The notes under the pieces: model-generated
Database searches by the model: none
What the model was told of the DNA's origin: nothing
Seen by the model: the letters and a program-made list of their open reading frames with translations, nothing else
Made by a program: the position numbers and the translations under genes
Part shown: piece after piece, positions 24,358-34,224 of the stretch
How the letters are laid out: each line of letters opens with the position of its first letter
Numbering within the stretch: position 1 is the first letter of the stretch
Assembly (NCBI GenBank): GCA_977030845.1
Contig: OZ365113.1
Span: 1,612,001 to 1,676,000 of the forward strand
Length of the DNA: 64,000 bases
Direction: 5' to 3'
From: Fimbriosthenelais zetlandica
Taxonomy: Eukaryota

Positions 24358-25100
24358 TATCATATAGGTCCTTTCCGGGGATCCGTATATGACAATGAAA
24401 GGCTGACAGATATCCGATAGCTTTTAGGAATATTTTAATAACAAAGAGTGGAAGATCACAAAGTTACACTTTCTTGAAATACAATTGAAACTCTCAAACC
24501 TGGTTAAAGGAGTAGCTTCTGAATTAAAGGTACACTTCAGAGATGTTCACAATTATCAATGTCCAATGGATTGTTCTGATAATGTTCTTTCAACACAATG
24601 TCCAGTTTAGGTCTCAATATGAAAAGTAGTGTCACAGTCCAAAGGTTTGGTCCTAAAGTGTAGTTAGTCTTGTGAGTAGGTTGCTACGATCAATGGTGTT
24701 ACTGCTGTTGCCCCGATGTTACTGATCCTACAACAGGACCACAGCTTCTTATAAAGGAAAACTGAATTCCCATTAACTTGTTTACTTCAAGAGAATTCTT
24801 GTAGCATTTCTATATCTACCAACACTGGGGATTCCCCATCCATGTCGTCATTTCTAGAAGACACGGAGTATCTTCCTGGAAATCCTGGTGACGCAAATGC
24901 TGATGCTGCTTCTGGTAATGGGTTTGCACGAAGAGGAAACCCATCTTTCATAGTGTTCATCCTGTTTGCGTTCACTTCCCCCAAACTGGATCTTATATGT
25001 TCTTATATGAAACAACTACTTCTATCAGAATTACTATGTGGTTAAATATCTTAAAGGTAATAGTGATTACATATTTAGCTTCACAATTCTAACCATTACA
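24358..25100 (-). repeat. 3' LTR (743 bp)
   Basis: Direct repeat of 33482-34224 (offset 9124). On the minus strand it reads TGTAAT...ATGATA. Confidence 0.97.
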
Positions 25101-25113
25101 ATTTTCCTCGTCT
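25101..25113 (-). other. Polypurine tract (imperfect)
   Basis: AGACGAGGAAAAT directly before the 3' LTR on the element strand. Confidence 0.6.
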
Positions 25114-25478
25114 ACGAAGAAAAGTTTGTCCTCAAACTTTGCACGTCTCTATCCCTAGCGAAATATCAGGTACATACATCAAGTATCAATAGGTAAAGGT
25201 AAAGTTTCAAAAGTCTTACAATCTACTTGAATACTTGTTATTATTGAGTTACTTCACATCAAGATATCTATCATATACTACGTAGGAATTATCATTAAAC
25301 AGCAAATGCAACTAGCATACATTCATTATCAAGTAGTATTCGAGTAACATTATTCATCTTATATATATATACATTGTCAGTACAGCTGTGTCACTATGCA
25401 AAGCCACAATAGATCTCTCATTTAAAGATTAAGTTTCTAGCAAGTATTATTTCTCGCTTAGGCCAGTTTGTATTTTCT

Positions 25479-27896
25479 TTAGCGGTTCGAACCTTCCACT
25501 TCATCATATTGGTTAGCCTTCTCAGTGATCCCAAACTGAAAGGCATAACCATAGTGTCCTAAAAATAGGTACACTCCATAATCCTTTTTCATTATTATCT
25601 TCTTTAGTATGTAACCGGTAACAACATTCAACTTTATTCTGTCAGGAGGAGTCAGCGAGTGTGTAGTCAGAGTGTTCATCATTTCAAATCCACCCCAATT
25701 CAAGATCAGAGTGGGGAACCAAAATCCTTCGACTCTCAAGTCAGAAACATAGGAATTAGCACTGAACGCCCAATGCTTGGGACAAAGTGGCAGCGTCGCC
25801 ACTGGAATCGAGATACATGCCATGCCGTTTGTGACTTCCATTCTCAGGGTCGTCACACTGTTGTTCAAAGAGTACCTTCTCTTGAACAACAAGACCAAAG
25901 TGATCGCCATAGCCATGACCACTATAACCATGGTCAAATATTCATGTATGTAATTCAGGGTACCTGTGTCGCCAATAATATGTTCAGAGCTGTGATCGCC
26001 ATTGTTCATGCCATAACCAACGTCCTTGGTTTCAGCTGGTTTTGCTAGGTGTTGTAACATAACAATGGCTGCAAGACCTTTCATTCTAACAATGAGATAG
26101 ATACAAAAACTCAAAGAAGTTAAACTGATGCCAACTGAAAGTATCGAGATTATGCTACCTGTTGAGAACATAGAATACTCAAGAGGAATTTCCTCAGTAT
26201 AACGCAATCTAGGGTAAATCTTCTGATTCTTACGGATCGCCTCTGCAACCCTTTTCAAACTGATACTGAACTTGTGGTCAGTATCAATGACCTCCTTTAT
26301 CTTCTGGTCATTTATATTCAATTTCATCACATCAGGCTCTATTCCACCTGGGAATGTGGTATCCCCTGAGATGTTCATCAGCACATCAGGAGAGTTAAAC
26401 TCTTGTAATATAGCTAAATTAATTGCATGAAATTTCTCAATTGAAGTAGTATTTTTGCAACCAGTAAGCCGTGGTGCTATATAATGGTTGTCTGTAAAAA
26501 TGGCACACTGACATGGTAGCTCCACCATGCAATGTGTACAGCCTTCTTCCCTTCTCTGTGAATCTAGGCAACTAATAGTTAACTCTTTTACAAATGAAAC
26601 TATTGCTCGTCTTGCATCGAGTTGATAGACCTCTGATTTGACCTTGTTTGGAAGTACTCGGAAATCGCAGTTCTTATGTACTGATTCCTTGTCTTGTCGC
26701 ATCAAAGACATAGCACAAGAATTCTCTGGACGAGTGTTTAGTGCTGGCAATGAAGGACAGTACTTCATATTCCGTTGATAACACTGACGGAAATCAGATT
26801 CCGAGATATCGATGTAGTGTGTCTCATCATCGGTCACCCCAATATAGTCAGGCAACTTAACCTTTGTCACCTGTGTGTTCTCCTCACTAACAGGCAATGG
26901 TAATGAGGTGATCTTATATATCTTCAAACTGGAGGAAGTTGCAGCCACAATAGGTAACTTGACCAAAACAAACAGATCATCGCCATGTCTTGTAATCACA
27001 ATTTTACATTTGGTATAGACATCTCTGGCTTTATCAAATAGAAGTCTGAATGTTGGAGTTTTCTGTCTCAAGACAGATTGAATTTCACTGATACTTTTCT
27101 GCAACTGTTTCTGTGGAACCAACATAGGGGTCAGTAACCCCTGCATAGCAAAACTTATACCTATTTGTAAATTCTCAAGCTGCCTCCCCACTATAGAAGA
27201 CAATCGTACATAGTTTGCCAGGAGCTGAATAAACCCTGCTGCAACCTTAAAGTCCCTGTTCATTGTTTCCATCACATTCTCAGTCATAGACTTGAGACTG
27301 TCATGATTAGCCTGTATCCCTTCAACAATCTTTGAGAAACGTTCATCAGCCGTCATCATGAAAGAAGACATTTCAGACACCTTATGCTGAAACAAATCTC
27401 CAAATTCTTCATTCTGCCTCTTTAGCACGGCAATGTGCTTACCCAGTTCCTTTATCTGTGCCTCTGTAGCTACACCAAATAGACCGCTCGCAAATTCTCC
27501 AATTATTGGGAGAAATGATCTTCGGCTCCGTGCTTGTGGCACTTGAGCTTCAGGGATAACCTCCCGTAATGTTTCCATTACTCCTGACATTTGTTCAATG
27601 GTCATATTTCTCAAATCGTGAATATCACGCATCACATTATTGTACAATAGGCAATTCCCTGGGTGACCTCTCCTCATGAAGCAGTATCTATGCCTTCCAG
27701 GATACCTGCTTGGCATCTGGATTCGGAAGGTGTGGGTCCAGAAATCATTAGTGGGTGTTGTTACTAGGACCTGTTGAAAGTAGGTCCCATAGTTGGGTCG
27801 TTCAATAATCTTTTGGTCGGCCACTGCTCCATATATGAATAGGTAGACTTGAATGAGCCTTGCCCAAAATTGCAGCAAGCCTTTCTGATTCTTCAT
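25479..27896 (-). CDS. env: Envelope glycoprotein, F-type class I fusion protein (open frame extends to 28127; likely start ATG 27896, 805 aa)
   Basis: Signal-like MKNQKGLLQFWARLIQVYLFIYGAVA, furin site RSRR followed by fusion peptide SFLPIIGEFASGLFGVAT, heptad region, Cys-rich segment and C-terminal hydrophobic helices. Lies between pol and the 3' LTR. Confidence 0.88.
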   Translation of the reverse strand: MKNQKGLLQFWARLIQVYLFIYGAVADQKIIERPNYGTYFQQVLVTTPTNDFWTHTFRIQMPSRYPGRHRYCFMRRGHPGNCLLYNNVMRDIHDLRNMTIEQMSGVMETLREVIPEAQVPQARSRRSFLPIIGEFASGLFGVATEAQIKELGKHIAVLKRQNEEFGDLFQHKVSEMSSFMMTADERFSKIVEGIQANHDSLKSMTENVMETMNRDFKVAAGFIQLLANYVRLSSIVGRQLENLQIGISFAMQGLLTPMLVPQKQLQKSISEIQSVLRQKTPTFRLLFDKARDVYTKCKIVITRHGDDLFVLVKLPIVAATSSSLKIYKITSLPLPVSEENTQVTKVKLPDYIGVTDDETHYIDISESDFRQCYQRNMKYCPSLPALNTRPENSCAMSLMRQDKESVHKNCDFRVLPNKVKSEVYQLDARRAIVSFVKELTISCLDSQRREEGCTHCMVELPCQCAIFTDNHYIAPRLTGCKNTTSIEKFHAINLAILQEFNSPDVLMNISGDTTFPGGIEPDVMKLNINDQKIKEVIDTDHKFSISLKRVAEAIRKNQKIYPRLRYTEEIPLEYSMFSTGSIISILSVGISLTSLSFCIYLIVRMKGLAAIVMLQHLAKPAETKDVGYGMNNGDHSSEHIIGDTGTLNYIHEYLTMVIVVMAMAITLVLLFKRRYSLNNSVTTLRMEVTNGMACISIPVATLPLCPKHWAFSANSYVSDLRVEGFWFPTLILNWGGFEMMNTLTTHSLTPPDRIKLNVVTGYILKKIIMKKDYGVYLFLGHYGYAFQFGITEKANQYDEVEGSNR

Positions 27897-28141
27897 TCGT
27901 GGCCAGGATCTGCGATGGTCCGAGCTCTCGTGACCTGCAGATAAAGACCAGAACCTATAAGACCCTGTGTAACACTCCGCCATGGAGCGACCATGCATTG
28001 AAATCTTTCCTAATATGGTGCACAAATTTTGAAATTTGGAAGACATTTTCATGTGTCTATATTCTTGCATGTCTCGCTCCAGCATCTTGACATCACAGAA
28101 GCAAAGAATCATCACAACCCTTCCCACTATCTAGACCACTC

Positions 28142-33452: not shown

Positions 33453-33467
33453 GGGATCGATTAGCCT

Positions 33468-33478
33468 ATTCTCCACCA
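33468..33478 (-). other. Primer-binding site, tRNA-Ala-like
   Basis: TGGTGGAGAAT, 3 nt after the 5' LTR, complementary to a tRNA 3' end ATTCTCCACCA typical of eukaryotic tRNA-Ala. Confidence 0.75.
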
Positions 33479-33481
33479 AAT

Positions 33482-34224
33482 TATCATATAGGTCCTTTCC
33501 GGGGATCCGTATATGACAATGAAAGGCTGACAGATATCCGATAGCTTTTAGGAATATTTTAATAACAAAGAGTGGAAGATCACAAAGTTACACTTTCTTG
33601 AAATACAATTGAAACTCTCAAACCTGGTTAAAGGAGTAGCTTCTGAATTAAAGGTACACTTCAGAGATGTTCACAATTATCAATGTCCAATGGATTGTTC
33701 TGATAATGTTCTTTCAACACAATGTCCAGTTTAGGTCTCAATATGAAAAGTAGTGTCACAGTCCAAAGGTTTGGTCCTAAAGTGTAGTTAGTCTTGTGAG
33801 TAGGTTGCTACGATCAATGGTGTTACTGCTGTTGCCCCGATGTTACTGATCCTACAACAGGACCACAGCTTCTTATAAAGGAAAACTGAATTCCCATTAA
33901 CTTGTTTACTTCAAGAGAATTCTTGTAGCATTTCTATATCTACCAACACTGGGGATTCCCCATCCATGTCGTCATTTCTAGAAGACACGGAGTATCTTCC
34001 TGGAAATCCTGGTGACGCAAATGCTGATGCTGCTTCTGGTAATGGGTTTGCACGAAGAGGAAACCCATCTTTCATAGTGTTCATCCTGTTTGCGTTCACT
34101 TCCCCCAAACTGGATCTTATATGTTCTTATATGAAACAACTACTTCTATCAGAATTACTATGTGGTTAAATATCTTAAAGGTAATAGTGATTACATATTT
34201 AGCTTCACAATTCTAACCATTACA
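33482..34224 (-). repeat. 5' LTR (743 bp)
   Basis: Direct repeat of 24358-25100. Confidence 0.97.

What the first reader, a model, noticed from the sequence alone, without database searches (positions are those of the whole stretch)
24358..34224. Young, apparently intact Gypsy-type endogenous retrovirus combining env, a chromodomain and in-frame gag-pol
Seen: identical LTRs, clean 4 bp TSD, uninterrupted gag, pol and env, and a chromodomain ORF after integrase. Established: chromodomain integrases define chromoviruses, which generally lack env, while env-bearing errantiviruses generally lack chromodomains and typically use frameshifting for pol. Inference: this three-way combination may be a distinct, possibly still active and infectious invertebrate lineage.
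Basis: partly seen in the sequence, partly recalled or inferred. Interest (0 to 1): 0.85.

Follow-up and report, generated by a model that had tools for sequence, protein, structure and literature searches.

The report
Young env-carrying chromodomain gypsy retroelement
This is a very recently inserted, almost intact Ty3/gypsy endogenous retrovirus with a paramyxovirus-F-like envelope gene and an integrase chromodomain, but that combination was already described in molluscs, annelids and cnidarians, so it is a new member of a known kind.

Summary
The observation largely holds. On the minus strand, 24358-34224 is a 9,867-bp LTR retroelement. It has two identical 743-bp LTRs and a 4-bp target duplication (CATC) that a paralogous empty site in the same window confirms. 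It carries gag (capsid, zinc knuckle), pol (PR-RT-RNaseH-IN, catalytic motifs present) and an open env.

Two corrections:
- gag and pol share a frame but are separated by one stop codon.
- The chromodomain is not in the pol frame. One frameshift detaches it, whereas five relatives have it in frame.

The chromodomain is real. Pfam is sub-threshold (19.1 bits against a 25.1 cut-off), but a family profile hits 58 solved chromodomains (best E 2e-8) and the model has the chromodomain fold. Env is an F-type class I fusogen: the model matches RSV/hPIV3 F at E 9e-11, and 19 of 59 relatives hit Baculo_F.

The novelty claim fails. Chary & Hayashi (bioRxiv 2023, eLife 2026) list many env-plus-chromodomain Ty3/gypsy elements. 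Relatives with the same layout include one in the oyster Pinctada.

One extra finding: eight of eight family members have stop, 8-nt spacer, then a covarying hairpin, a MuLV-like readthrough layout.

Verdict: new member of a known kind; modest interest.

The parts
24354..24357 (.). Target-site duplication, left copy (CATC)
   Evidence: The paralogous empty site carries the target once.
24358..25100 (-). 3' LTR in the element's orientation, 743 bp; ends TG...TA on the minus strand
   Evidence: 100% identical to the other LTR. One AATAAA-like signal at LTR position 662.
25101..25112 (-). Polypurine-rich tract directly upstream of the 3' LTR (GACGAGGAAAAT on the minus strand)
   Evidence: The neighbouring stretch is conserved in L003 and L004. 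Its function is inferred.
25479..28112 (-). env: F-type class I fusion glycoprotein, 877 codons from the first ATG. The likely true start is Met73 (27896), followed by a signal-peptide-like stretch. Open, 0 breaks.
   Evidence: - 2,617 relatives at E<=1e-3, with alignments starting at residues about 72-105.
- P0001 matches at E 8e-70 and carries Baculo_F; 19 of 59 relatives hit Baculo_F.
- The AF2 ectodomain model has pLDDT 81 and pTM 0.71. Foldseek finds RSV F and hPIV3 F at E 9e-11.
27471..27530 (-). The only furin-like site in env (RSRR, residues 195-198), followed by a hydrophobic fusion-peptide-like stretch
   Evidence: The site and the following G/F positions are nearly invariant in the 59-sequence alignment. 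This matches the F-type layout in PMC13524379.
25884..26162 (-). Two predicted transmembrane segments of env (residues about 651-677 and 725-743) with a short linker
   Evidence: Hydropathy peaks of 2.17 and 2.65.
25482..25880 (-). Conserved C-terminal module of env after the second transmembrane segment (about 133 residues, two conserved Cys); no named family
   Evidence: Conserved in the L004 env and across most of the top 150 relatives, whose alignments run to residue about 850-866. No Pfam hit even at E<=1.
28142..32351 (-). pol (PR-RT-RNaseH-IN-SH3-like, then an acidic linker and the chromodomain tail). Broken once: one frameshift puts the tail in another frame.
   Evidence: - Pfam domains and catalytic motifs.
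- Best solved relative is yeast Ty3 Gag-Pol, 7q5b, E 2e-127.
- The tail is homologous to the in-frame C-terminus of P0002 pol, E 2e-28.
- pol and tail share a frame in five relatives.
28196..28342 (-). Chromodomain fold (three strands plus a helix) within the pol tail
   Evidence: - AF2 core pLDDT is above 90.
- All top 50 Foldseek PDB hits are chromo or chromoshadow domains.
- The six-sequence profile hits 58 PDB chromodomains, best MPP8 at E 2.3e-8.
- Pfam Chromo scores 19.1 bits here, but 30.8 and 32.4 bits at the homologous place in P0005 and P0008.
32303..32354 (-). gag stop codon (TAA), 8-nt spacer and 12-bp hairpin: putative readthrough signal
   Evidence: - 8 of 8 family members have stop, 8 nt, then a hairpin in the same register.
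- There are compensatory changes at four stem positions.
- The background rate is 0.6% of in-frame pol positions.
- The layout is as in MuLV (PMC4178896).
32352..33452 (-). gag from the first ATG to its stop: capsid-like domain and one CCHC zinc knuckle. Open, 0 breaks.
   Evidence: Retrotrans_gag E 2.4e-6 and zf-CCHC; knuckle at residue 349; 30-35% identical to gag of L003, L004 and L006.
33464..33478 (-). Primer-binding site, TGGTGGAGAATAGGC on the minus strand, 3 nt after the 5' LTR
   Evidence: L003 shares TGGTGGAGAA and L004 has TGGAGGAGAA at the same place. The assignment to a tRNA-Ala-like acceptor end is an inference and was not verified.
33482..34224 (-). 5' LTR in the element's orientation, 743 bp
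34225..34228 (.). Target-site duplication, right copy (CATC)
19972..20072 (+). Paralogous empty site: a copy of the flanking repeat that reads straight across the insertion point
   Evidence: Self-comparison and the three-way alignment.

Best explanation
The region is a single, very recent insertion of a Ty3/gypsy (Metaviridae) LTR retroelement. It belongs to the env-carrying type now called 'ancient errantiviruses', in the subgroup whose integrase ends in a chromodomain.

Likely working, step by step:
1. (inferred) Transcription starts in the 5' LTR, and a host tRNA primes reverse transcription at the PBS 3 nt after that LTR.
2. (shown as sequence layout and covariation, not as translation) Gag is made by ordinary termination. 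A minor share of ribosomes read through the single in-frame gag stop, helped by a conserved hairpin 8 nt downstream, and produce Gag-PR-RT-RNaseH-IN.
3. (inferred) Env comes from a subgenomic, probably spliced, message.
4. (fold and motifs shown, activity inferred) Env is an F-type class I fusion glycoprotein. It has a signal peptide, one furin-like cleavage site directly before a hydrophobic fusion peptide, a long helical region, two membrane segments and a conserved C-terminal module.
5. (inferred from chromoviruses) In the family, the integrase carries a C-terminal chromodomain and a basic tail that would tether integration to chromatin.

In this particular copy one frameshift separates that tail from pol, and two of the three aromatic-cage columns are not aromatic.

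Identical LTRs, a clean 4-bp duplication and an empty paralogous site show a genuine, young transposition.
For: - Structure of the insertion.
- Domain content and motifs.
- Ty3 is the best solved relative (E 2e-127).
- Env:
  - 2,617 relatives.
  - Baculo_F in 19 of 59 relatives.
  - Confident model.
  - Model matches pneumo- and paramyxovirus F at E 9e-11.
  - Furin site, fusion peptide and membrane segments.
- Chromodomain.
- Same gag / stop / pol-chromo / F-env layout in L001/L002, L004 and L005 (Pinctada imbricata).
- L009 has a long unscanned ORF where env would lie.
- Published description of env-plus-chromodomain Ty3/gypsy elements.
- One in-frame stop, 8-nt spacer and covarying hairpin in 8 of 8 elements, against a 0.6% background.
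- MuLV parallel.
- Family recently active elsewhere (LTRs 99.5% and 99.75% identical in L004 and L003; multicopy clusters).
Against: - The host is unidentified, and no second copy of this exact element was found. Copy number and current activity are therefore unknown.
- Placement inside the published clade was not tested on a tree. The closest pol in the databases is only 59% identical.
- The window env gives no direct Pfam hit.
- Pfam Chromo is below its cut-off for this copy.
- The chromodomain is out of frame and its aromatic cage is incomplete.
- The stop is TAA here but TAG in seven relatives.
- A pseudoknot was not demonstrated.
- Splicing of env and the primer tRNA assignment are inferences.
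Confidence: 0.85

Rival explanations
1. One reading: the env + chromodomain + in-frame gag-pol combination defines a distinct, previously unrecognised invertebrate retroviral lineage.
For: The closest pol is only 59% identical and the closest env 45%. The exact element is absent from the collections searched. The readthrough layout is not mentioned in the paper that describes the group.
Against: The architecture is published for many phyla. It is shared by relatives at 40-56% pol identity, including a named bivalve. The in-frame stop is a family trait.
Confidence: 0.08
2. The frameshift between integrase and chromodomain is not in the animal's DNA but is an assembly or sequencing error. The real copy would then have all three genes open, with the chromodomain fused to pol as in its relatives.
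For: The LTRs show no difference at all, so the insertion is very young and few mutations are expected. All five relatives examined have the tail in frame. Everything else in the element is open.
Against: Nothing in the window speaks against the assembly here. A single indel in about 8.4 kb of internal sequence is also compatible with a defective parental RNA that was packaged in trans. The tools cannot decide this.
Confidence: 0.3
3. The chromodomain ORF is expressed on purpose from a second frame by programmed ribosomal frameshifting, giving integrase with and without the chromodomain.
For: The tail frame overlaps the end of the pol frame, and the tail stays open to its conserved basic end.
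Against: Five relatives, including the three closest, encode the tail in the pol frame. A copy-specific recoding site would have to be new, and no supporting signal was looked for or seen.
Confidence: 0.04
4. The third ORF is not a working fusogen but a decaying or co-opted remnant, and the element behaves as an ordinary intracellular retrotransposon.
For: Close relatives L003 and L006 have no env at all, yet L003 has 99.75% identical LTRs. env is therefore dispensable for propagation in this lineage. No Pfam hit for this env.
Against: env is open over 877 codons. It keeps the furin site, the fusion peptide, nine invariant positions including seven cysteines, and the membrane segments. It folds confidently into an F-like ectodomain.
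Confidence: 0.12

Closest known systems
Chromodomain-carrying F-type 'ancient errantiviruses' of Chary & Hayashi (for example Mollusca_Bivalvia_Cari_errantivirus_2; PMC13524379)
   Same: gag-pol-env order, Ty3/gypsy pol, a chromodomain C-terminal to the integrase, and F-type env with a furin site and fusion peptide. The named relatives of this pol are molluscan. A Pinctada locus has the same layout.
   Different: No sequence-level comparison with their elements was possible. The host is unknown. The chromodomain is out of frame in this copy. The readthrough hairpin and the C-terminal env module are not described in that paper.
Insect errantiviruses (Drosophila Gypsy, ZAM, Idefix)
   Same: Ty3/gypsy backbone with a baculovirus-F-related env downstream of pol. 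LTRs with a short target duplication.
   Different: Chromodomain calls in the paper's table fall outside the insect elements. The paper places non-insect elements in a separate group. In a 2003 survey, pol was in the -1 frame in 28 of 51 animal LTR retroelements, most of them from Drosophila. The insect elements mostly use tRNA-Ser, Lys or Leu primer sites, whereas this PBS is of another kind.
Chromoviruses (chromodomain-containing Ty3/gypsy such as Tf1, Sushi, CRM)
   Same: Chromodomain after the integrase GPY/F-SH3 region. Yeast Ty3 is the best solved relative of the pol.
   Different: Chromoviruses have no env. The published env-plus-chromodomain clade sits basal to them. The aromatic cage is incomplete here.
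Gammaretrovirus gag-pol readthrough signal (MuLV)
   Same: gag and pol are in one frame with a single stop, an 8-nt spacer and then a stable structured RNA.
   Different: Only a hairpin is shown, not a pseudoknot. The stop is TAA in this copy (TAG in relatives). The pol lineage is unrelated. Readthrough was not measured.
Pneumovirus/paramyxovirus F and baculovirus F proteins
   Same: Predicted ectodomain fold, a furin site before the fusion peptide, and Baculo_F hits in relatives.
   Different: About 10% sequence identity to the solved F proteins. This env has two membrane segments and a conserved module of about 130 residues after them.

Membership tests
Ty3/gypsy LTR retrotransposons (Metaviridae) | pol domain order PR-RT-RNaseH-IN | tested here: met
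   Pfam order along the pol frame; motifs DTGA, YIDD, HHCC and GPY.
Ty3/gypsy LTR retrotransposons (Metaviridae) | Direct LTRs, short target-site duplication, PBS after the 5' LTR and polypurine tract before the 3' LTR | tested here: met
   743-bp identical LTRs and a 4-bp duplication; empty paralogous site; PBS-like TGG... 3 nt after the LTR and a purine-rich tract.
Ty3/gypsy LTR retrotransposons (Metaviridae) | RT/IN closer to Ty3/gypsy than to retroviruses, caulimoviruses or other groups | tested here: met
   Against solved structures: Ty3 E 2e-127, caulimovirus 2e-56, foamy virus 1e-44, gammaretrovirus 2e-26. A full tree with GyDB references was not possible.
Env-carrying Ty3/gypsy with chromodomain (Chary & Hayashi 2023/2026) | gag, pol and env present in the order gag-pol-env | tested here: met
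Env-carrying Ty3/gypsy with chromodomain (Chary & Hayashi 2023/2026) | F-type env with signal peptide, furin site, fusion peptide and F-like ectodomain fold | tested here: met
Env-carrying Ty3/gypsy with chromodomain (Chary & Hayashi 2023/2026) | Chromodomain at the C-terminus of pol | tested here: inconclusive
   The chromodomain is present and homologous to the in-frame tail of relatives. In this copy one frameshift separates it from pol.
Env-carrying Ty3/gypsy with chromodomain (Chary & Hayashi 2023/2026) | Position inside their clade on the POL tree | not testable with these tools
   Their tables give coordinates, not sequences. The assemblies of my relatives are not in their tables.
Chromoviruses | Chromodomain that passes the family model | tested here: inconclusive
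   Pfam Chromo scores 19.1 bits against a 25.1 cut-off for this copy. Relatives P0005 and P0008 pass. The family profile gives E 2.3e-8 to MPP8, and the fold matches.
Chromoviruses | No env; gag-pol only | tested here: not met
   An open F-type env is present.
Insect errantiviruses (Gypsy/ZAM/Idefix group) | Membership of the insect clade on the pol tree | not tested
   No reference sequences were available. The named relatives are molluscs at about 46% identity, and no insect protein is among the 120 best.
Insect errantiviruses (Gypsy/ZAM/Idefix group) | pol reached by -1 frameshifting | tested here: not met
MuLV-type readthrough signal (a way of working, not a family membership) | In-frame stop, about 8-nt spacer, then a conserved downstream RNA structure | tested here: met
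   8 of 8 elements, compensatory changes at four stem positions, background 0.6%.
MuLV-type readthrough signal (a way of working, not a family membership) | The downstream structure is an H-type pseudoknot | tested here: inconclusive
   Only the hairpin was found. No convincing second stem was seen by eye in the folds.

The most novel reading that the evidence does not exclude
Two features shared by this family may be undescribed.
- A stop codon, an 8-nt spacer and a covarying hairpin at the gag-pol boundary. This mirrors the gammaretroviral readthrough signal and is conserved across env-bearing and env-less members at 40-58% pol identity.
- A conserved cysteine-bearing module of about 130 residues after a second membrane segment of the F-type env. 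Depending on its topology, it could be an extra luminal or virion-surface domain.
Probability: 0.4. Interest if true: 0.5.

Novelty: new member of a known kind. Interest (0 to 1): 0.3.

Why it matters
This is a clean, datable example of an env-carrying Ty3/gypsy element outside insects. It has identical LTRs, a target duplication proven by an empty site, and all but one reading frame open. It supports the published view that such elements are still expanding in non-insect animals.

It also shows env-bearing and env-less members of one lineage side by side in one assembly, which bears on how often env is lost or gained.

The conserved stop-spacer-hairpin layout gives a concrete sequence-level hypothesis for how Gag and Gag-Pol are balanced in this group. 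It does not change the picture of retroelement diversity.

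Tried and rejected
- Exact-sequence look-ups of env with two start choices found no record. Copy number in the host could not be measured.
- Host identification from a neighbouring M60-like peptidase ORF failed: the best hits are only 31% identical (krill, amphioxus).
- Searches of papers for the assembly accessions of the relatives found nothing. Cluster look-ups gave no names.
- A scan of JGI metagenome contigs with env found no relative.
- No other copy or solo LTR is in the window.
- Rfam found no family in the element; there was only a chance sub-threshold snoRNA hit.
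- Pfam on env, and on its C-terminal module alone, gave nothing meaningful.
- Sequence search of env against solved structures found nothing. Only the profile and the model reached F proteins.
- The PBS was not found in the published tables in either orientation. No tRNA gene in the window or the fetched loci matches it, so the tRNA-Ala-like reading stays an inference.
- MAFFT misaligned the 3' arms of the hairpins. I tabulated pairs from individual folds instead.
- Targeting to tRNA genes in the Ty3 manner was considered and rejected. The nearest tRNA-like sequence is about 275 bp away.

Full report
**Observation**

The element lies on the minus strand.
- Two 743-bp direct repeats, 24358-25100 and 33482-34224, are identical over their whole length. 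Identity ends abruptly at both outer edges.
- The four bases outside each end are CATC.
- A self-comparison of the window showed that both flanks belong to a repeat family of about 1.1-1.4 kb. One paralogous copy reads straight through the insertion point near 20017-20022 and carries the target only once. This is empty-site evidence for a true transposition with a 4-bp duplication.
- No other copy or solo LTR is in the window.
- With no difference in 743 aligned positions, the 95% upper bound on LTR divergence is about 0.4%. Under assumed rates of 1-5e-9 per site per year, that is less than roughly 0.4-2 million years. This is an inference; the host's rate is unknown.

**Genes**

Reading the internal 8,381 bases on the minus strand gives three genes.
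- gag is open and carries a retrotransposon capsid domain and one CCHC knuckle.
- Exactly one stop codon follows, and pol continues in the same frame. pol has protease, RT, RNase H, integrase zinc finger, integrase core and an SH3-like end, with DTGA, YIDD, HHCC and GPY motifs.
- The best solved relative of pol is yeast Ty3 Gag-Pol (E 2e-127), far ahead of caulimovirus, foamy virus and gammaretrovirus enzymes.
- env is open for 877 codons from the first ATG.

Break count: gag 0, pol 1 frameshift, env 0.

**The chromodomain**

The stretch after the integrase lies in another reading frame.
- Alone it scores 19.1 bits against Pfam Chromo, below the 25.1 cut-off (E 1.2e-3). It gives marginal matches to solved chromodomains (best E 3e-4).
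- It is clearly homologous to the last 114 residues of the closest relative's pol (P0002, residues 1239-1352 of 1355), where it is in frame (E 2e-28).
- In five relatives' loci, pol and this tail share one frame.
- Relatives P0005 and P0008 pass the Pfam cut-off at the homologous place (30.8 and 32.4 bits). Of the 120 best pol relatives, 35 carry PF00385 in the precomputed lists.
- A profile of six tails hits 58 solved chromodomains and nothing else, with MPP8 best at E 2.3e-8.
- An AlphaFold model has three strands and a helix with core pLDDT above 90. All 50 best Foldseek matches are chromo or chromoshadow domains.

So the chromodomain is real, but in this copy it is detached from pol.

In the alignment, the three columns that hold the aromatic cage in the Pinctada relative (Y, W, Y) read H, W, A here. 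Whether it still reads methyl-lysine is uncertain (inference).

I cannot tell whether the frameshift is a mutation, a defect inherited from the parental RNA, or an assembly error.

**Env**

The window's env has no Pfam hit of its own and no sequence match to solved structures. Other evidence identifies it.
- An exhaustive search finds 2,617 relatives at E<=1e-3. Their alignments start near residue 72-105 and run to about residue 860.
- The start of those alignments fits a true start at Met73 followed by a signal-peptide-like stretch.
- The word-based search found one homologue (E 8e-70) that carries Baculo_F. Of 59 aligned relatives, 19 hit Baculo_F.
- The ectodomain model (pLDDT 81, pTM 0.71) matches RSV F, hPIV3 F and metapneumovirus F (best E 9e-11, probability 1.0).
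- There is one furin-like site (RSRR) directly before a hydrophobic stretch. Seven cysteines are invariant in the family, and there are two membrane segments.

This is the F-type env described for errantiviruses.

After the second membrane segment comes a module of about 130 residues. It is conserved in the family but has no named domain.

**gag-pol expression**

- gag and pol are in one frame with one stop in the window (TAA) and in seven relatives (TAG).
- In all eight, an 8-nt spacer follows the stop, then a hairpin whose 5' arm begins at the same nucleotide.
- Among the first six elements, stem positions 13, 18, 19 and 20 change on both sides while keeping the pair.
- Only 17 of 2,832 in-frame positions within the pol genes (0.6%) give a comparable helix at that offset.
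- The layout equals that of the MuLV readthrough signal, which has UAG, an 8-nt spacer and a pseudoknot. I could not show a second stem.
- No Rfam family matches.

I conclude that the family makes Gag-Pol by stop-codon readthrough. The layout and covariation are shown; the translation event is inferred.

**Relatives and what is known**

- The closest pol is 59% identical. The top three come from one ENA assembly, and the named relatives are molluscs (Pinctada, Haliotis, Mytilus) at about 46%.
- L004 is a full element with 99.5% identical LTRs, gag, one stop, pol with an in-frame chromodomain tail, and an env 37% identical to this one.
- L005, from Pinctada imbricata, has pol with Chromo followed by a Baculo_F protein.
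- L001/L002 have a chromo tail and Baculo_F env.
- L003 and L006, equally close, have no env. env is therefore lost or gained within the lineage.

Chary & Hayashi (PMC13524379) report exactly this kind of element. They describe a clade from Cnidaria, Mollusca and Annelida that all carry a chromodomain and that sits basal to chromoviruses. They list dozens of chromodomain-positive env-carrying elements.

A tree with their sequences could not be built because only coordinates are published in the tables I could read.

**Context**

The insertion lies inside arrays of tRNA-Arg(ACG) and tRNA-Asn(GTT) genes and tRNA-like repeats. These sit between two inverted M60-like peptidase genes. The nearest tRNA-like sequence is about 275 bp from the right end, as in the empty paralogue, so there is no Ty3-style targeting.

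**Primer-binding site**

The PBS, TGGTGGAGAATAGGC, shares its first ten bases with L003 and nine of those ten with L004. Its complement has the base at acceptor position 70 that would give a G3:U70 pair, the tRNA-Ala identity element. That reading rests on textbook knowledge and was not verified against a host tRNA.

**Verdict**

This is a real, young, almost intact element. It is correctly recognised as an env- and chromodomain-bearing gypsy-type retrovirus, but it is a new member of a published kind.

**Transparency**

My first notebook entry and the outputs give the bounds of the two reading frames on either side of the pol frameshift, as the ORF tools printed them. I did not determine or record the exact place of the shift or any change that would undo it. 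I built no joined, repaired or consensus sequence.

Noticed in passing
window 32303-32354 (-); L001, L003, L004, L005, L006, L007, L009 at their gag stops: Every family member examined has one in-frame gag stop, an 8-nt spacer and a hairpin in the same register, with compensatory changes. This is a MuLV-like readthrough layout and is not mentioned in the paper that describes these elements.
   Followed up: partly
window 25482-25880 (-): The F-type env ends with a conserved module of about 130 residues, with two conserved cysteines, after a second membrane segment. It has no Pfam name and is conserved across most of the top 150 relatives.
   Followed up: partly
window 6458-12968, 17780-17856, 35216-36436, 44737-44959: Dense arrays of near-identical tRNA-Arg(ACG) and tRNA-Asn(GTT) genes on both strands surround the element.
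   Followed up: no
window 18300-24357 and 34225-34614: A repeat family of about 0.7-1.5 kb in direct and inverted copies (78-91% identical). Each copy holds a degenerate tRNA-like sequence (Rfam tRNA 34-49 bits at 18407, 20294, 22911 and 34500). The element inserted into one copy.
   Followed up: partly
window 13435-17269 (-) and 40072-44408 (+): Two inverted, diverged copies (82-92% identical over the aligned pieces) of an M60-like / TCAF-like peptidase gene flank the region. This suggests a large inverted segmental duplication. The best database relatives are only 31% identical.
   Followed up: partly
window 56247-57104 (-): An ORF with several C2H2 zinc fingers and a weak zf-BED match; probably a host or transposon-derived zinc-finger gene.
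   Followed up: no
L003 and L006 against L004 (all ENA ERZ25767047): Env-less and env-bearing members of the same lineage (pol 55-58% identical to the window's) coexist in one assembly. The env-less L003 has 99.75% identical LTRs, so env loss does not stop propagation.
   Followed up: partly
window 4840-5038: A run of 199 N (assembly gap or masked); left as it is.
   Followed up: no
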